A stretch of DNA of 64,000 nt, from positions 124,001 through 188,000 of the IMG/VR virus record IMGVR_UViG_3300017917_001342, one strand, 5' to 3'. Below the pieces are notes generated by a model. The model was not told the DNA's origin and searched no databases. It saw nothing but the letters and a program-made list of their open reading frames with translations. The position numbers and the translations under genes are program-made. This document shows, one piece after another, positions 3,028-39,225 of the stretch. Position 1 is the first letter of the stretch, and every line of letters begins with the position of its first letter.

Positions 3028-3116
3028 AGGCATCCGGCGACGATGGAGTGTCGTGCTGGTCTCCAAAACCAGTGTCTGTAAAGACTTAGCGAGTTCGAAT
3101 CTCGCGATGCCTGCCA
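3028..3116 (+). tRNA. tRNA-Trp(CCA) with long variable arm
   Basis: AGGCATC/GATGCCT, CTGGT-CTCCAAA-ACCAG, GCCA. Confidence 0.8.
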
Positions 3117-5518: not shown

Positions 5519-5593
5519 GGGTTTGTAGCTCAACGGTAGAGCAGGTGTCTCTAAAACATCGAGGTGTGGGTTCGAATCCCATCTTACCCGCCA
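5519..5593 (+). tRNA. amber suppressor tRNA (CTA)
   Basis: GGTGT-CTCTAAA-ACATC; acceptor has two U.U mismatches; GCCA. Confidence 0.8.
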
Positions 5594-12721: not shown

Positions 12722-12799
12722 GCTTCCGTAGCTCAATGGAATTAGAGTAGCGAGCTTCTACCTCGTTGGTTGTGGGTTCGAGTCCTACCGGGAGCACCA
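12722..12799 (+). tRNA. tRNA-Arg(TCT)
   Basis: GCGAG-CTTCTAC-CTCGT. Confidence 0.9.
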
Positions 12800-15732: not shown

Positions 15733-15876
15733 AAAGTTATTTATTACCTATAAACCATAGCGTTTGGACGCACAACCATTGGGTATAGTGTAGTCACTAA
15801 GTGGGGCACTTGTGCCGAACAGGGTTCGCGCCTGTTCTTTTTTTCAAAAAAACTGCATTTATTTTAAAAAATGCTG

Positions 15877-15943
15877 TTGACCATGCTGGCAAGAACAGCT
15901 ATGTTATGTGAGTAAGCAAAACAGCTTACACGCTCTTTGACAA
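15877..15943 (+). promoter_or_regulatory. sigma70 promoter + hairpin + rrn-type boxA leader (unit A)
   Basis: TTGACC-17-TATGTT; GTAAGC/GCTTAC; CGCTCTTTGACAA. Confidence 0.6.
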
Positions 15944-15949
15944 GATAGA

Positions 15950-16386
15950 AAACACAATAGACTTGGTAGTGTGAGGAACACGTAAACCCAAGTTGCGTAA
16001 CGTGTGCTGTTACTACCGCGCGGTTCGGGATACTGTAAAGTATTACTCGTATTGCTAATTGTAGCAGCACACACTAAACAGAAACTGGTAGCTATAGCAT
16101 ATTGTTAATGCGCTATGATATCAGAGGAAGACAGTGTGGCGGCTGTCCAGAGCACTAGCTCTGCAAGCACAAATCAGCTAACATGTGTACTGATACTGGA
16201 GAAACCTGTCGATTCAGGTCAATGGCTGTTTCTGTTTTTACTTGCAACCTGCCTATGTGGAATTGCGTGATAATCTGCTGCGTCAGGCCTGAAGGGACAA
16301 TTCCCGCGGCGCAATGGAAGAGCCACATTAGTCAAAACGTTGAGATTGTATCAAGATGCGAGTGGGTTGCAACTAAAAACAGAAAA
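15950..16386 (+). ncRNA. large structured ncRNA, unit A
   Basis: no credible ORF; long stems 16076-16085/16228-16237 and 16229-16249/16365-16385. Confidence 0.5.
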
Positions 16387-16390
16387 GGCA

Positions 16391-16459
16391 TTGACGTAGT
16401 AAATACGCGATGCTACATTAACTACGTAGACGGTAAACAGTTTACAGGTTCTTTGACAA
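16391..16459 (+). promoter_or_regulatory. sigma70 promoter + hairpin + boxA leader (unit B)
   Basis: TTGACG-17-TACATT; GTAAA/TTTAC; GGTTCTTTGACAA. Confidence 0.6.
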
Positions 16460-16469
16460 TTAGGGAATA

Positions 16470-16575
16470 CTAACAGTTGCGGTTGGGGCACAAGTGGTTG
16501 GCCTGAATCCATAAAACTCCTTGGGTGATGCCTGTCGGGAGCAAGCTGAGTTCGAATCTCAGACGCAACTGTTAG
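16470..16575 (+). ncRNA. tRNA-like core on a 12-bp stem, no CCA
   Basis: CTAACAGTTGCG/CGCAACTGTTAG; CTGAG-TTCGAAT-CTCAG. Confidence 0.55.
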
Positions 16576-16584
16576 TTAATAAAC

Positions 16585-16704
16585 AGCAACGCAAGTCTGT
16601 GTAATGCTAAGAGATCGGGGTTCAAATCCCCGGATTGCGGGGAAACCAGGCGAACTAGCTTAACTGGTAAAAGCGATTAGCGTAACAGGTATGCTTGCGT
16701 TGCT
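16585..16704 (+). ncRNA. circularly permuted tRNA-like module 1 (YrlA-type topology)
   Basis: long stem, then GAGAT, T arm, GAAA-capped acceptor-like stem, TAGCTT-AACTGGTA-AAAGC D arm, back into stem. Confidence 0.7.
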
Positions 16705-16712
16705 TTGATAAT

Positions 16713-16829
16713 ACAGGGTGTTGTTTGAATAACACTTGCCGGTGTCACGGGTTCGAGTCCCGTTCGGTCCATTGCGGGTCGATAGCTCAGTTGGTAGAGC
16801 ATGGTGAGAGTATCAAACATTCATCCTGT
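16713..16829 (+). ncRNA. circularly permuted tRNA-like module 2 (YrlA-type topology)
   Basis: GTGTC, ACGGG-TTCGAGT-CCCGT, TCGGTCC-ATTGC-GGGTCGA, TAGCTCAGTTGGTAGAGC. Confidence 0.75.
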
Positions 16830-17376
16830 TGTAAACGACATGGGCCCGAACTAAGTATCGGATAATAAAATAAAAAGGCCATAAGCGCAGCAGCGCAACG
16901 TCTTAAGTGACCATTTGTAGCAGCCTAGGCTACACCGAGGCACATGTTAACTAGCGCAGGGTGACGAACCCGTAAGACGCAAGAATATTGGTACTGCTAC
17001 TTGAAATGCAGCTAAGTCGCTCGAATACGAGAGTAGAGCCACACGCAGGAGGGTCCAACTGAAAGAGAAGGCGCTACCAAGTACACCATCAACTAAGTTG
17101 AATGTTTGTGCGACTTTAGGTAGAGATGCTACCCAGCAGAGTTTGCAAATCTAATGAGCTCGCACTGAAATTGGAATACGGTGTTAAAAGTTGCAATACT
17201 GATTCAAACGTATTAGTATACCCATCTTAATACGTTGGTGTTAATGGCTTGTGGGTAACGGTAACTTAACTTAGCAATAGGTTAGACGCGGAGGGACTAT
17301 CAGCGAAAGCTTGCATACCCATAGATGTGATGCCGGGCTGGCAGGGAGGAATGAGACTCCCACTTTGATAGATTTT

Positions 17377-23491: not shown

Positions 23492-23971
23492 ATGAATGAC
23501 GATTATTACAAGTTGCGAGCAGAAGCTGTAACACGAGAACATATTCAACGTGTAGCAGAGCTACTTGGCAAATGTGCAACAGAATTAATTGCTCGTGGAG
23601 TAAACCACGACAAATCTAAACTAGAAGATCCGGAATTGCCAATTCTAGCAACTGTACAAGAAATTGTTGATAAAAATGGCTATTCTGAATATGGATCACC
23701 AGAATACTACGAAGTAATGCGTATTCTAAAACCTATGCATGAACATCATTATGCAAACAATAGGCATCATCCCGAATATTACCCAGATGGTGTAAACGGA
23801 ATGACACTGTTCGACCTTATTGAAATGTTTATAGATTGGAAAGCTGCTAGTGATCGCGCAAATGATCCACTAATGCACATTAGTCATTCTACAAAACGCT
23901 ACGGTATCGACACACAACTAGCTACGATACTGCGTAACACTGCTGATTATTTAGATTTTAAACACAACTGA
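23492..23971 (+). CDS. DUF5662-like HD-type protein
   Basis: HDKSK, HHYANNRHHPEYY, DLIEMFIDW. Confidence 0.7.
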   Translation: MNDDYYKLRAEAVTREHIQRVAELLGKCATELIARGVNHDKSKLEDPELPILATVQEIVDKNGYSEYGSPEYYEVMRILKPMHEHHYANNRHHPEYYPDGVNGMTLFDLIEMFIDWKAASDRANDPLMHISHSTKRYGIDTQLATILRNTADYLDFKHN

Positions 23972-24056
23972 AACAACTTGATTTTTTCCTAAGTGTGTGT
24001 TAAATATATAAAGTGCGGTATAGATCCGTACTACACACACAGAGAAAGTTATTAAA

Positions 24057-24380
24057 ATGAATACACCAGATTATCAAAAAATGGCCAATGATGTTGCAGA
24101 AACTGTAAAAGCTGCATTGGTTCCTGAAATTAAATTCAGCAAAAACGGCTATGAAATCCGTAGCGACATTCTCAAAGAAGCCAAGGACTTGGTTGCTCAA
24201 GACTTCCACATGAAATGGCAAGGTTGGGAACTTACTGCGAAACGTGACGAAAAAACTGGTCAAATTGTTACAGCAGTTGGCATGCCTGAGTTTCCAGGAC
24301 TTGATAAGGTTCTAGAAACTGCTGAAAAAATGTACGAGTTTGTTAACTACGGCAAGCGCCGCGAAGATAACAAAAAGTAA
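24057..24380 (+). CDS. hypothetical phage protein
   Basis: SKNGYEIRSDIL motif; terminator hairpin follows. Confidence 0.7.
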   Translation: MNTPDYQKMANDVAETVKAALVPEIKFSKNGYEIRSDILKEAKDLVAQDFHMKWQGWELTAKRDEKTGQIVTAVGMPEFPGLDKVLETAEKMYEFVNYGKRREDNKK

Positions 24381-24426
24381 TATCAACTGTAGTGGGCGTA
24401 ACTGCCCACTACACTTTAACAAATTT

Positions 24427-24446
24427 GGTTCCTTAGCTCAGCTGGA
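24427..24446 (+). pseudogene. 5' fragment of a disrupted tRNA-Arg
   Basis: GGTTCCTTAGCTCAGCTGGA; its acceptor strand pairs with AGGGACC of the fragment at 24915-24957. Confidence 0.7.
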
Positions 24447-24463
24447 ACAGGAAAACATATGCT

Positions 24464-24540
24464 GGTTCCGTAGCTCAGTTGGATAGAGCAGGGAACTTCT
24501 AATTCCAAGGTCGAGGGTTCGAATCCTTCCGGGACCGCCA
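24464..24540 (+). tRNA. tRNA-Arg(TCT)
   Basis: GGAA-CTTCTAA-TTCC, GCCA. Confidence 0.92.
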
Positions 24541-24586
24541 TATGTTTTCCATTGGTTAGAGATAAATACTCTAACCAGGAGCAATA

Positions 24587-24919
24587 ATGACATCATTCAC
24601 TTGTAGAACATGCGGCATAGAAGGTGAAGAAAACTTCTATAAAACTGCAAAGTATCAATGCAAGAAGTGCTGGAATCAGCGCACTTACAAAACAGGCATT
24701 GACAAGATCAATAAACTTAAATCTGAACTAGGCGGATGCTGTGCGCGATGCGGTTACGATAAGTATCTAGGCGCACTTGAGTTCCACCATTTGGATCCCA
24801 CAGTAAAAGAATTTGCACTAGGACACAAGAGGGGGCTGTCTGAAGAAGCACTTCGAAAAGAGATTAACAAGTGCATCCTACTGTGTGCGAACTGTCATAG
24901 AGAAGAACATCAAGTCTAA
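24587..24919 (+). mobile_element. HNH endonuclease inserted in a tRNA-Arg gene
   Basis: CARCGY..ALEFHH..LLCANCHREEH; stop codon lies in the TCTAA anticodon loop of the orphan 3' tRNA half. Confidence 0.8.
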
Positions 24920-24957
24920 GCAGTGGGTCGCAGGTTCGAGTCCTGCAGGGACCGCCA
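24915..24957 (+). pseudogene. 3' half of the disrupted tRNA-Arg(TCT)
   Basis: TCTAA-GCAGT-GGGTC-GCAGGTTCGAGTCCTGC-AGGGACC-GCCA. Confidence 0.75.
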
Positions 24958-25001
24958 TTTTAATTGACACAGTACAAGTTCTGTGCTATAAATAAGTTAA
25001 T

Positions 25002-25076
25002 GCGGGTGTAACTCAGAGGTAGAGTGTCAGCCTTCCAAGCTGTTCGTCGTGGGTTCGATTCCCATCGCCCGCTCCA
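25002..25076 (+). tRNA. tRNA-Gly(TCC)
   Basis: CAGC-CTTCCAA-GCTG. Confidence 0.92.
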
Positions 25077-25082
25077 AATTAC

Positions 25083-25157
25083 AGACTGTTAGTTCATTAG
25101 TAGAACGCTTGCGTGACATGCAAGAGGTAGTGGGAGCGTAACCCACACAGTCTACCA
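25083..25157 (+). tRNA. tRNA-Val(GAC), non-canonical T loop
   Basis: CTTGC-GTGACAT-GCAAG; T loop AGCGTAA. Confidence 0.75.
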
Positions 25158-25167
25158 GATAGAAAAC

Positions 25168-25839
25168 ATGTTCACATATCAACACATACGTAACGAAGTT
25201 AAACGACGCTGTAAAGCACAGCCGGCAACAATGATAGTGCCATGGGTATTAGATTATATCAATGCACACTTAGCAACACTGCCACCTAACAGTGTTATAG
25301 CAGAACTAGGTACATTTGTTGGTGGTACAGCAGTTTTATTTGCACAATCGCATCCATCGTTTGTGATACACACATATGATATAAACAAGTTTGACAATTT
25401 TGCCAACAGTTCAATGCTACAGTCATTAGATAAACGATACGACCTGCCATTGCTTAACAAAGATGATATTGTTGAAATTCAACGGTTGCATTTAGAAGAC
25501 TACCCTAATATAGTAATGCATGTTGAAGATTCGGCTAAGATCACAGTTGATAATTTATCAGCAGTACTAATAGACGATAATCGAGACGAGCACTCACTAT
25601 TTGAGTTGTTACACACTATTTGGCCGTTGTTGAATGATAACGGTATGATTTTTGCAGATGACGCAGATAATCCACATATACACAATGCGTTTTATAAATT
25701 TGCTAAAATCAAAGATTTAGAGTTGACAATATACAGTAAATGCATTAAATTAGTAAAAACAGCAGCAATGTCGGACAAAAGACAGTTTGATTTTAAAGAC
25801 ACCCTGTTGCACAGAATAACAATAGGAGACCACGTATGA
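25168..25839 (+). CDS. class I SAM-dependent methyltransferase
   Basis: IAELGTFVGGT, YDI, VLIDD. Confidence 0.65.
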   Translation: MFTYQHIRNEVKRRCKAQPATMIVPWVLDYINAHLATLPPNSVIAELGTFVGGTAVLFAQSHPSFVIHTYDINKFDNFANSSMLQSLDKRYDLPLLNKDDIVEIQRLHLEDYPNIVMHVEDSAKITVDNLSAVLIDDNRDEHSLFELLHTIWPLLNDNGMIFADDADNPHIHNAFYKFAKIKDLELTIYSKCIKLVKTAAMSDKRQFDFKDTLLHRITIGDHV

Positions 25840-26923: not shown

Positions 26924-26998
26924 GTCGCGTTAGCAAAACGTTAATGCGCTGCCCCGCAAAGGTAGAGGACTGTGGTTAAATTCCCAGACGCGACTCCA
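26924..26998 (+). tRNA. tRNA-Cys(GCA), divergent
   Basis: GTCGCGT/ACGCGAC-TCCA, CTGCC-CCGCAAA-GGTAG; D loop lacks GG. Confidence 0.7.
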
Positions 26999-29039: not shown

Positions 29040-29920
29040 CACGATATTAACGTTGTGAAACGTGGATGTTGTGTTTACGCATTGGGGGTTTAGCCTCAAC
29101 AGGATAAGTGCAGTGATGCACCCAAAGCTAGAAAGCCTACATACTAGCGCCAGCAGTGGTCCATCTAAACAAGCCTGAACTAGACTTGACTCGGGTTAAA
29201 CCGAAAGCAAGTCCCGTCCGTAGAAAGGCGGTAGGCAGTAAGTTAGGAATAGTGTCCGAAAGGATAGTTGCAGAGCCAGTCGGTGAGCGATAAGAGGGTT
29301 GGCGCCCAAACACTGTTCAGCCAAACTAACGAATGCTGAAAGTTAACAGGTAGGTACAGAGTCTGAGCCCGCAAGCAAAGGCATGGTACCATTTCGAGAG
29401 TGGAAGGGTTAGGCCCCGGATACTTGAAGAAACACTGATTAGTCCGCAAGACGAAAGGTATGAGGTGTGCTGTATTGGGTATGTCAAAAGCATATTCAGC
29501 AGCCGAGGTAGCACATCTCGGATAGGTTGCAAAATCAGCTAATGGTAAGCTAATTCCCTTCTAAGGAATCGATTGCAGGTTCAACTCCTGTTTTTGAAAA
29601 ATGCAAAGTCTACCTCGGTATGTAGTGTAAGGTGTCAAATACTTGAGGCGCAAGCCAATCAAGTTCAACAAAGCTCGCAAGGCAGCGTTGATTTGTGCTA
29701 GAAGTTTCGTAGCCCGCAAGGCTTAATGGTCCGCAAGATCAACGGAAAACAAGGTGCAGAATAGCTACATACGACGAGTCTACTGCCTGACTCTAAAAAC
29801 GGCGACACTGTTAATGGACTAGGTTACCGCAAGGGACTTAGTGGATGTCGGAAGAAAGCGGCTCGCAAGGCTGGCAATAATGTCCGAAGCGTTAACATCG
29901 AACGTGTAATCTCAGCGTTT
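29040..29920 (+). ncRNA. GOLLD-like large ncRNA (5' boundary uncertain)
   Basis: ~0.9 kb without credible ORF, at least 9 GCAA/GAAA-capped hairpins, GGTAGGTAC..GAGTCTGAG, GAGGTAGCACATCTC and terminal GTAATCTCAG blocks recalled from GOLLD; tRNA-cluster context. Confidence 0.6.
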
Positions 29921-32899: not shown

Positions 32900-33143
32900 T
32901 AATCCCCGTACAATAGTATTGAGGGTCTTATCAAAAACTGTGTTTGTGTAACAACGAGCGTGTTGACCACTAGTGTACATTAACACACGATAAGCGTATG
33001 CTGAAGTACGATAGCGTTCAGTAGGCTACATGATGTGAAGGTGGCAGTTGTGCAGCACAGCTAAAGGAGGATGATACCCCATGCTGCAATATTTGTTGAT
33101 TTTTTGTTTTTTAGACAGTAATATATGTATAAATAAATTTGAT

Positions 33144-38965: not shown

Positions 38966-39225
38966 CTGTTGCATTTTTAACTGCACTGTGCTATAGTGAG
39001 TTATTGATTATGCGAAAAAAGGTTCGTAGTAGCGGCTAGTAATCCAGGAACCTTGCGGCAAATAAGGTGAGAACGCCCGCCTCACACACCAGCAATGGTA
39101 AAGTAGCGAAAGCGAAGAGATGTAGGAATCTTGTCTATATGGCAAGTTGAAAACAGGGACCCTACTATTTGCCAATACCCATTAAGATCGTCTGTAGGCT
39201 AGCCAAATTTTTAAAAAGGTGTGTT

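What the first reader, a model, noticed from the sequence alone, without database searches (positions are those of the whole stretch)
24427..24957. HNH endonuclease cassette caught splitting a tRNA-Arg(TCT) and supplying a replacement copy
The 5' fragment GGTTCCT-TAGCTCAGCTGGA (24427) and the 3' half TCTAA-GCAGT...AGGGACC-GCCA (24915) are complementary halves of one tRNA. Between them lie an intact tRNA-Arg(TCT) with a different anticodon stem, a TAAATA promoter and an HNH gene whose TAA stop is the anticodon loop itself. Inference: an intron-less homing element that targets a tRNA gene and carries a cleavage-immune substitute.
Basis: partly seen in the sequence, partly recalled or inferred. 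Interest (0 to 1): 0.7.

Follow-up and report, generated by a model that had tools for sequence, protein, structure and literature searches.

The report
HNH-plus-tRNA cassette splitting a tRNA-Arg gene
In a 519-kb freshwater phage genome, a small mobile unit made of a tRNA-Arg(UCU) gene and an HNH nuclease gene sits inside another tRNA-Arg(UCU) gene, which it has destroyed, and related nuclease genes show the same break-and-replace layout at other tRNA genes.

Summary
An intact tRNA-Arg(TCT) gene in an unrelated viral contig (L267) equals the window's 5' fragment (20/20), then 14 nt, then the 3' half (43/43). So 468 nt (24447-24914) have replaced exactly 14 nt of a tRNA gene.

The insert holds a complete, different tRNA-Arg(TCT), a conserved 23-nt hairpin with a Shine-Dalgarno site, and an intact 110-aa HNH gene. 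The HNH stop codon is the T-A-A of the broken anticodon loop.

Relatives lacking the HNH carry one uninterrupted tRNA-Arg at this locus. These are L187, L001 and near-identical strains in two metagenome runs, one of which holds both forms.

At least 11 of the 13 distinct closest HNH relatives have the same tRNA-Arg(TCT)-hairpin-HNH unit in unrelated contexts. More distant relatives show the full split layout around tRNA-Arg, tRNA-Met and tRNA-Glu.

Best reading: a free-standing homing-endonuclease cassette that travels with its own copy of the tRNA it disrupts. It is related in kind to T4 SegB and the T5 F-Tfl enzymes, but in a break-and-replace form I did not find described.

Cleavage specificity, immunity of the inner copy and promoter activity are inferred, not shown.

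The parts
24385..24418 (+). Terminator-like hairpin after the upstream 107-aa gene. This is the last sequence shared with sister strains, so it marks the left edge of the variable block.
   Evidence: Inverted repeat I2. Contigs of X7 and X9 match up to 24418 and then diverge. The hairpin is conserved in L187 and L001.
24427..24446 (+). Outer tRNA-Arg(TCT) 5' fragment: acceptor 5' strand, D-stem 5' strand and D-loop up to A20. It is a dead remnant.
   Evidence: 20/20 identical to the L267 intact tRNA. It is the only upstream 7-mer that pairs 7/7 with the 3' remnant. A G18-to-T change at 24444 occurs in two strain contigs, consistent with loss of constraint.
24447..24463 (+). 17-nt filler between the outer fragment and the inner tRNA. 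It contains the left arm (24450-24461) of a 12-bp inverted repeat.
   Evidence: It has no counterpart in the relatives' cassettes.
24464..24540 (+). Inner, intact tRNA-Arg(TCT) with encoded CCA: the replacement copy carried by the cassette.
   Evidence: ARAGORN and Rfam 64 bits. No substitutions in strain contigs. A tRNA-Arg(TCT) lies in the same position in at least 11 of the 13 distinct closest HNH loci.
24539..24550 (+). Right arm of the 12-bp inverted repeat that extends the inner tRNA's acceptor stem.
   Evidence: It is unique among the genome's 55 tRNA genes.
24554..24581 (+). Conserved 23-nt hairpin (8-bp stem, loop ATAAATA) followed by the AGGAG ribosome-binding site. It is a cassette-specific cis element.
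   Evidence: 21-23/23 identical in 8 of 10 relatives whose HNH ORFs are 62-71% identical in DNA. It occurs once in the 518-kb genome.
24587..24919 (+). HNH endonuclease gene, 110 aa: N-terminal Cys4 zinc ribbon plus a zinc-stabilised HNH core. The stop codon lies in the broken anticodon loop.
   Evidence: Catalytic and zinc residues are invariant in 62 homologues. AlphaFold pLDDT is 89.9, and the best PDB matches are all HNH domains, though weak. Strain differences in the one contig with the most changes (L186) are 4 synonymous and 1 conservative.
24915..24957 (+). Outer tRNA-Arg(TCT) 3' half: anticodon, 3' strand of the anticodon stem, variable loop, T arm, acceptor 3' strand and GCCA. It is a dead remnant.
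   Evidence: 43/43 identical to the L267 intact tRNA.
24958..25001 (+). Spacer with TATAAATA (24987-24994) before tRNA-Gly(TCC). This is the right part of the variable block; homology with sister strains resumes at about 25000.

Best explanation
A two-gene selfish cassette has been inserted into a resident tRNA-Arg(UCU) gene. The cassette is a tRNA-Arg(UCU) gene, a short conserved hairpin with a ribosome-binding site, and a free-standing HNH homing-endonuclease gene.

Proposed course of events:
1. The HNH, made by a cassette-bearing phage in a mixed infection, breaks a cassette-free tRNA-Arg gene somewhere between the D loop and the anticodon arm (inferred).
2. The break is resected and repaired by copying the donor's tRNA-plus-HNH unit (inferred).
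3. Donor and recipient shared little homology beyond the tRNA itself, so the joins were imprecise. 14 nt of the target were lost, a 17-nt filler was created, and both ends of the old gene were left behind as dead halves (anatomy shown).
4. The HNH frame now runs into the old anticodon loop and uses its TAA as its stop (shown).
5. tRNA-Arg(UCU) supply at this locus now depends on the cassette's own copy (inferred from its intactness and conservation).

The composite block then spread, or was exchanged, among closely related strains, where it coexists with HNH-free alleles (shown).
For: Anatomy:
- An exact intact version of the split tRNA exists in L267, and the insertion replaces 14 nt.

Insertion polymorphism:
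- L187 (upstream-gene product 94% identical) and L001 (74%) are syntenic. Each has one uninterrupted tRNA-Arg and no HNH.
- Run X7 has the flank at about 99% identity and no HNH depth. Its contig runs from 24418 into an intact tRNA start.
- Run X9 holds both forms.
- The composite is present in X1, X2, X4 and X8.

Unit mobility:
- At least 11 of the 13 distinct closest HNH loci (63-77% aa identity) have tRNA-Arg(TCT), the hairpin and the HNH in different neighbourhoods. In L180 the unit sits alone between protein-coding genes.
- Arg(TCT) is the nearest upstream tRNA in 18 of 49 non-redundant loci, against a 7% background (P 3e-9).

Recurrence:
- Orphan T arms are 12-fold enriched within 40 nt after HNH stops (6 observed, 0.49 expected, P 1e-5).
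- Five loci (window, L166, L110, L154, L100) have a matching 5' fragment upstream of an intact tRNA.
- The intact tRNA is of the same isoacceptor as the split one where that can be read: Arg, Met and Glu.

The gene looks active:
- All catalytic and zinc residues are intact, and strain differences are mostly synonymous.

Precedent:
- T4 SegB cuts inside tRNA genes and drives inheritance and co-amplification of adjacent tRNA genes (PMC2330249, PMC13096335).
- The T5 HNH enzymes F-TflI, II and IV lie in the tRNA cluster (cited in PMC2330249).
Against: - No cleavage data exist for this HNH or any close relative, so its target could lie outside tRNA genes.
- HNH-linked tRNA-Arg genes are diverse, and one distant example (L114) has the same anticodon stem as the split allele. 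No immunity signature can be read.
- The protein is only 110 aa and lacks the extra DNA-binding domains of many longer relatives. High site specificity is therefore uncertain.
- The HNH-free alleles in the closest strains are not the split allele. They are a third and a fourth tRNA-Arg variant with different spacers. The direction and place of the original event cannot be fixed.
- The genome has another tRNA-Arg(TCT) at 12722-12799, so the inner copy is not strictly needed.
Confidence: 0.7

Rival explanations
1. The HNH is a passenger. tRNA arrays recombine illegitimately through their conserved D and T arms. A fragment that happened to carry a tRNA-Arg and an HNH gene was captured in a broken or replicating tRNA-Arg gene, without the HNH making the break.
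For: The window holds many orphan T-arm-like motifs far from any HNH. The loci contain 84 orphan T arms away from HNH genes. The tRNA-Arg locus carries at least four different alleles among relatives, which shows frequent exchange.
Against: Orphan 3' halves are 12-fold enriched directly after HNH stops. The layout recurs with the inner tRNA matching the split one in identity. The tRNA-Arg-hairpin-HNH unit is conserved across unrelated contexts.
Confidence: 0.15
2. The structure is a remnant of nuclease-driven segmental amplification. Tandem repeats of tRNA plus nuclease gene, as shown for SegB and tRNA-Tyr in phage T6, formed and later collapsed, leaving partial tRNA copies.
For: PMC13096335 shows repeat units of tRNA plus a truncated segB. 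They form by microhomology between the tRNA 5' end and the nuclease gene's 3' end, and they are unstable without selection.
Against: Outer and inner tRNAs are different alleles, with all five anticodon-stem pairs, two T-stem pairs and the T loop differing. They are therefore not copies of one another. There is only one HNH copy, full length, and no tandem repeat.
Confidence: 0.08
3. The outer halves still make a working tRNA. In this reading the insert is an intron removed at the RNA level, or the halves are joined in trans.
For: Group I introns do occur in bacterial tRNA anticodon loops (PMC3984707).
Against: 14 nt of the tRNA body are absent: the D-stem 3' strand, the anticodon-stem 5' strand and positions 32-33. 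No intron family matched at E up to 1. A conserved G18 is mutated in some strains.
Confidence: 0.01

Closest known systems
Phage T4/T6 SegB (GIY-YIG free-standing homing endonuclease in the tRNA gene cluster; PMC2330249, PMC13096335)
   Same: It is a free-standing nuclease gene embedded among phage tRNA genes, and it cuts inside tRNA genes. It promotes inheritance or amplification of itself together with the adjacent tRNA gene. Its ORF end abuts the next tRNA.
   Different: It has a different fold (GIY-YIG, not HNH). No split resident tRNA with a carried replacement has been described for it. In that study the association showed no preference for a tRNA isotype, whereas this HNH clade is tied to tRNA-Arg(UCU).
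[quoted passage not shown] 2004, as cited in PMC2330249 and PMC10644984)
   Same: They are HNH enzymes encoded inside a phage tRNA array. A homologue of the window's HNH lies in a Tequintavirus tRNA array and overlaps the next tRNA by 10 nt.
   Different: I could not read the original paper, so their target sites are unknown to me here. No tRNA-plus-HNH cassette nested in a split isoacceptor is reported in the texts I could search.
HNH genes in mycobacteriophage and Mycobacterium tRNA arrays (PMC5966550, PMC6409571, citing Pope et al. 2014)
   Same: HNH genes are the most widespread protein-coding genes in tRNA arrays and have been proposed to generate tRNA repertoire diversity.
   Different: The proposal rests on association only. 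No insertion anatomy, split halves or replacement copy is described.
Genes split by homing-endonuclease insertion: 'fractured genes' (PMC2677866) and the Aeromonas phage Aeh1 mobE-split nrdA (from my own knowledge)
   Same: A free-standing homing-endonuclease gene sits between the two halves of a gene it has interrupted.
   Different: There, function is kept by assembling or splicing the two protein halves. Here the halves are dead, and function is supplied by a second complete gene carried by the element.
Synthetic cleave-and-rescue gene drives (ClvR; from my own knowledge)
   Same: The logic is the same: a nuclease that destroys a useful gene is linked to a differing copy of that gene, so carriers keep the function.
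   Different: ClvR is engineered, Cas9-based, and works in diploid animals by killing non-carriers. Here resistance of the rescue copy is unproven, and a further tRNA-Arg(TCT) exists in the genome.

Membership tests
HNH (His-Me finger) endonucleases, Pfam PF01844 / PHROG 2255 | Sequence match to the family profile | tested here: met
   Pfam HNH 21.6 bits, against a cut-off of 21.4. phrog_2255 E 2.6e-27.
HNH (His-Me finger) endonucleases, Pfam PF01844 / PHROG 2255 | Catalytic His (HH), Asn and distal His, plus the Cys pairs that hold zinc | tested here: met
   C52, C55, H67, H68, N102, C103 and H104 are invariant; C100 and H108 are at least 90% conserved in 62 homologues. All are present in the window protein.
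HNH (His-Me finger) endonucleases, Pfam PF01844 / PHROG 2255 | Beta-beta-alpha-metal fold | tested here: inconclusive
   The model is confident (pLDDT 89.9). Nearly all top PDB matches are HNH domains (Cap5, PacI, T5 SciA, Cas9 HNH, T4 endo VII), but all have E > 0.07 and TM about 0.4.
HNH (His-Me finger) endonucleases, Pfam PF01844 / PHROG 2255 | Metal-dependent DNA cleavage or nicking | not testable with these tools
   Needs purified protein.
Free-standing homing endonuclease genes (intron-less homing) | Not inside a self-splicing intron or intein | tested here: met
   No intron family at E up to 1. The interrupted tRNA lacks 14 nt.
Free-standing homing endonuclease genes (intron-less homing) | Presence/absence polymorphism at one locus among close relatives | tested here: met
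   L187, L001 and X7 lack the gene. X1, X2, X4 and X8 have it. X9 holds both forms.
Free-standing homing endonuclease genes (intron-less homing) | Same gene, with its linked flank, found in unrelated genomic contexts | tested here: met
   The tRNA-Arg-hairpin-HNH unit occurs in at least 11 of the 13 distinct closest loci, each with different neighbours.
Free-standing homing endonuclease genes (intron-less homing) | The enzyme cuts the endonuclease-free allele at or near the insertion site, and the carrier allele is resistant | not testable with these tools
   Only indirect evidence is available. Junctions in independent split loci cluster between the D loop and the T stem, mostly in or next to the anticodon arm. 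No immunity signature is visible.
Free-standing homing endonuclease genes (intron-less homing) | Preferential inheritance in mixed infection | not testable with these tools
   The phage is uncultured (pond metagenome).
Group I intron in a tRNA anticodon loop | Two exons that together make a complete tRNA | tested here: not met
   14 nt are missing relative to the intact allele.
Group I intron in a tRNA anticodon loop | Ribozyme core | tested here: not met
   No Rfam intron match in 23900-25400 at E up to 1.
Cleave-and-rescue type selfish element (functional analogy, not a natural family) | A nuclease gene linked to a complete, differing copy of the gene that is broken | tested here: met
   The inner tRNA-Arg(TCT) is intact and differs from the split one at all five anticodon-stem pairs. 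The same holds for Met and Glu in L110 and L154.
Cleave-and-rescue type selfish element (functional analogy, not a natural family) | The rescue copy is resistant and the broken gene is otherwise indispensable | tested here: inconclusive
   Resistance is untestable here. A further tRNA-Arg(TCT) at 12722-12799 argues against strict dependence.

The most novel reading that the evidence does not exclude
This HNH family includes natural cleave-and-rescue elements. Each clade would recognise the anticodon-arm region of one tRNA species, destroy cassette-free copies of that gene, and carry a functional copy whose anticodon stem has covaried out of recognition. Because tRNA genes are conserved across unrelated phages, they would serve as portable landing pads. 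That would let the cassette hop between phage families and continually reshuffle phage tRNA repertoires. Breaking the resident gene would also make loss of the cassette costly.
Probability: 0.3. Interest if true: 0.75.

Novelty: new variant of a known kind. Interest (0 to 1): 0.62.

Why it matters
Homing endonucleases in phage tRNA clusters are known, and HNH genes are the commonest protein genes in tRNA arrays. How they reshape those arrays has mostly been inferred from association.

This locus gives a base-exact record of one event: the target allele, the 14-nt loss, the cargo and the junctions. It also shows live presence/absence polymorphism in natural populations, and the same layout at other tRNA species.

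If the enzyme is shown to cut the allele it split, three things follow:
- It would be a natural counterpart of engineered cleave-and-rescue drives.
- It would help explain why phage tRNA sets turn over so quickly.
- It would offer very small (110 aa) nucleases with tRNA-gene specificity.

It also warns annotators that tRNA halves next to HNH genes are scars, not genes.

Tried and rejected
- **Close phage records.** A near-identity search of the phage collection found no close relative, only tRNA-Gly matches.
- **Intron reading.** Rejected. There is no ribozyme match and 14 nt are missing.
- **Paralogues.** The genome has no second copy of this HNH.
- **12-bp inverted repeat.** It is not a general processing signal of this phage. 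It is unique among the genome's 55 tRNA genes, so its origin stays open.
- **TATAAATA as a general promoter.** There are 4 matches against 3.55 expected in the window, so no support from counts. The cassette hairpin occurs once in the genome.
- **Immunity signature.** Aligning 14 HNH-linked (upstream), three HNH-downstream and four free tRNA-Arg(TCT) genes showed none.
- **Hairpin and D arm.** I noticed that the hairpin's 5' arm resembles the tRNA D-arm region (9 of 12 positions). By my estimate, about 0.3 such matches are expected over all offsets, so I dropped it.
- **Intact allele of the L110 split tRNA-Met.** Two viral-contig scans found only L110's own contig.
- **Left junction in other viral contigs.** None found.
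- **Downstream methyltransferase as a query.** It gave only the L001 contig again.
- **Solved structures.** Sequence and fold searches gave only weak generic HNH matches.
- **Complex prediction.** I did not run one, because no protein-protein claim is made and DNA jobs give no verdict.

Full report
**Setting.** The window is bases 124001-188000 of a single 518,643-bp contig with 40.6% G+C. The contig comes from a pond metagenome. It carries 55 tRNA genes and a tmRNA, and 46 of the tRNA genes lie in the window. It is a very large uncultured phage. No close relative is present in the collection of deposited phage genomes.

Reading the sequence and the repeat, tRNA and ORF scans gives, in order:
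- a terminator-like hairpin after a 107-aa gene (24385-24416);
- a 20-nt tRNA 5' fragment (24427-24446);
- a 17-nt filler;
- a complete tRNA-Arg(TCT) with encoded CCA (24464-24540; Rfam 64 bits);
- a hairpin and AGGAG;
- a 110-aa ORF (24587-24919) that matches Pfam HNH and PHROG 2255;
- a 43-nt tRNA 3' half (24915-24957).

The ORF's stop codon, 24917-24919, is the last anticodon base plus the two A's of the loop.

**The decisive check.** I searched viral contigs for the 3' half. One contig, L267, carries an intact tRNA-Arg(TCT) that is identical to the 5' fragment at 20 of 20 positions and to the 3' half at 43 of 43. Between them it has 14 nt, TAGAGCAACTGCCT. So the 468 nt at 24447-24914 have replaced exactly those 14 nt. 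The lost part is the end of the D loop, the D-stem 3' strand, position 26, the anticodon-stem 5' strand and positions 32-33. The outer gene is dead and no intron can rescue it. No intron family matched either.

**Relatives without the HNH are not split.** The upstream 107-aa protein is common in freshwater phage contigs, but only two fetched loci are syntenic here.
- L001 (74% identity) has the 107-aa gene, the hairpin, one uninterrupted tRNA-Arg(TCT), a TATAAATA spacer, tRNA-Gly(TCC) and the methyltransferase gene. Its tRNA shares the D arm and T stem, and four of five anticodon-stem pairs, with the split allele.
- L187 (94% identity) has the same order, including tRNA-Val(GAC). It has a single uninterrupted tRNA-Arg of yet another sequence and no HNH.

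Public metagenome assemblies add population data.
- Contigs from runs X1 (probably the source sample), X2, X4 and X8 carry the composite with a handful of differences.
- Run X7 has the flank at about 99% identity and no depth at all over the HNH. Its contig leaves the window sequence after 24418 and runs straight into an intact tRNA start.
- Run X9 holds both the composite and the L187-type allele.

The block that differs between strains runs from just after the hairpin (24419) to the start of tRNA-Gly (about 25000). It therefore includes the two dead halves and their spacers. The composite is a transferable allele. The original insertion need not have happened in this genome's direct ancestors.

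**The cargo is a conserved unit.** The protein search found 614 homologues. I fetched 15 contigs carrying the closest ones (63-77% identity). They represent 13 distinct loci, because L167/L168 and L172/L173 are the same sequence.
- In at least 11 of the 13 distinct loci, an intact tRNA-Arg(TCT) lies directly upstream of the HNH, followed by the same hairpin and ribosome-binding site.
- L171 is cut off within the tRNA but keeps its 3' end.
- The neighbourhoods otherwise differ: other tRNAs, oxygenase or deaminase genes, or no other tRNA at all.
- The 23-nt hairpin element is 21-23/23 identical in 8 of 10 relatives whose HNH ORFs are only 62-71% identical in DNA.
- The element occurs once in this 518-kb genome. 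It belongs to the cassette, not to the host phage.

Across 78 non-redundant loci, tRNA-Arg(TCT) is the nearest upstream tRNA in 18 of the 49 that have one. Its share of all tRNAs in those loci is 7% (P 3e-9).

**The layout recurs.**
- L166 (HNH 73% identical) has the full arrangement around a different outer tRNA: a 5' fragment, an intact tRNA-Arg(TCT), hairpin, HNH and a 3' remnant whose acceptor strand pairs 7/7 with the fragment.
- L176 has a 5' fragment that ends in the D loop, as in the window.
- L110 splits a tRNA-Met(CAT) and carries an intact tRNA-Met(CAT).
- L154 does the same with a tRNA-Glu.
- L099-L101 again involve tRNA-Arg. In L099 and L101 the stop codon again lies in TCTAA.

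In five loci, the only upstream 7-mer able to pair with the remnant's acceptor strand is followed at once by a canonical D-arm start. Orphan T arms are 12 times more frequent in the 40 nt after HNH stops than elsewhere in the same loci (6 against 0.49 expected, P 1e-5). The junctions fall between the D loop and the T stem, mostly in or next to the anticodon arm. That is where a break with variable resection would put them. It is also the part of a tRNA gene that best distinguishes one tRNA species from another. This is suggestive, not proof.

In another 12 loci the HNH frame ends with the TAG or TGA formed by bases near the 5' end of an intact downstream tRNA. A Tequintavirus homologue overlaps tRNA-Ile by 10 nt in the same way.

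**The nuclease looks alive.**
- All zinc and catalytic residues are present, and they are invariant or nearly so in 62 homologues.
- The ORF ends two residues after the last conserved His, within the usual range.
- The model is confident, and nearly all its best structural matches are HNH domains, although weak.
- In the strain contig with the most changes (L186), the ORF has four synonymous changes and one conservative change.
- Across the strain contigs, the inner tRNA has no changes.
- The outer 5' fragment has lost the universally conserved G18 in two of those contigs.

**What is known.** T4 SegB, a GIY-YIG enzyme in the tRNA cluster, cuts in tRNA genes of T2 and drives inheritance of the T4 tRNA region. 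The T5 HNH enzymes F-TflI, II and IV are encoded in its tRNA cluster (PMC2330249). In T6, SegB cuts within tRNA genes and co-amplifies itself with tRNA-Tyr, and segB genes are generally found near tRNA genes (PMC13096335). HNH genes are the most widespread protein genes in mycobacterial tRNA arrays (PMC5966550, PMC6409571).

Homologues of the window's HNH lie in tRNA arrays of cultured Certrevirus, Felixounavirus and Tequintavirus phages. The kind is therefore known. In the searchable literature I did not find a nuclease travelling with a copy of the tRNA it interrupts, nested between the two halves of the resident gene.

**Limits.**
- Nothing here shows what the enzyme cuts.
- The linked tRNA-Arg genes are diverse and give no immunity signature.
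- The protein is very small.
- A second tRNA-Arg(TCT) gene at 12722-12799 means the inner copy is not indispensable.
- The 12-bp inverted repeat that brackets the inner tRNA is unique among the genome's 55 tRNA genes and is predicted to extend the acceptor stem. It could be a processing stem or a template-switch scar.
- Promoter function of the ATAAATA loop is untested.

**Verdict.** The mobile-cassette and replacement-copy anatomy is strongly supported. Targeting and immunity are plausible but unproven. This is a new variant of a known kind.

Noticed in passing
window 29462-29918 (+): Full-length GOLLD RNA (Rfam RF02032, 234 bits). The odd 'tRNA-Arg(tct)' that ARAGORN calls at 29527-29600 is embedded in it, so it is probably part of that large RNA rather than an ordinary tRNA gene.
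   Followed up: partly
window 39057-39173 (+): A skipping-rope RNA match above the gathering score (46.9 bits).
   Followed up: no
window 5519-5593 (+): A tRNA with anticodon CTA, which reads the TAG stop codon; ARAGORN labels it 'Pyl'. Rfam scores it 60.9 bits as a tRNA. I did not test whether the phage recodes TAG.
   Followed up: no
window 15750-17370, especially 16722-16822 (+): An ORF-poor stretch with several orphan T-arm motifs and two orphan tRNA 5'-like starts. It has a Y RNA-like (YrlA) match at 44.8 bits, E 4e-8, which is below the gathering score. It may encode tRNA-like modules of larger non-coding RNAs.
   Followed up: partly
window + strand: 1308, 6638, 7585, 8228, 8512, 8591, 17926, 17954, 18113, 28989: T-arm-like motifs outside any called tRNA. 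A few are followed by 7 nt, one base and CCA. They could be further tRNA debris or tRNA-like elements.
   Followed up: no
window 26924-26995 (+) and 3028-3116 (+): A tRNA found by Rfam (46.6 bits) but missed by ARAGORN, and an unusually long, 89-nt tRNA-Trp(CCA).
   Followed up: no
L084-L086, L090, L093, L105, L107, L118, L121, L138, L159, L160; L162 (Salmonella phage Kenya-K36): In 12 loci the HNH frame runs into the next, intact tRNA gene and stops at the TAG or TGA formed by bases near the tRNA's 5' end, mostly positions 8-10. In L084-type loci a tRNA-Met ends one base before the HNH start, so its acceptor strand supplies the GGGAG ribosome-binding site. The T5-like phage shows a 10-nt overlap with tRNA-Ile.
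   Followed up: partly
L166 about 995-1026 and 530-895: A further orphan tRNA 3' remnant lies just upstream of the split locus. It sits next to an ORF with a faint NUMOD3 hit, possibly a second homing endonuclease.
   Followed up: no
window 24444: G-to-T change at the invariant G18 of the dead 5' fragment in two strain contigs, L183 and L185. The inner tRNA is unchanged in all strain contigs.
   Followed up: yes
window 24987-24994 and 33128-33135 (+): TATAAATA lies 15-16 nt before the start of two tRNA-Gly genes, and the same motif precedes tRNA-Gly in L001. The count in the window is no higher than chance.
   Followed up: partly
genome 311343-311751 (outside the window): A tmRNA gene with tag peptide ANDNVAPSYALAA.
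   Followed up: no
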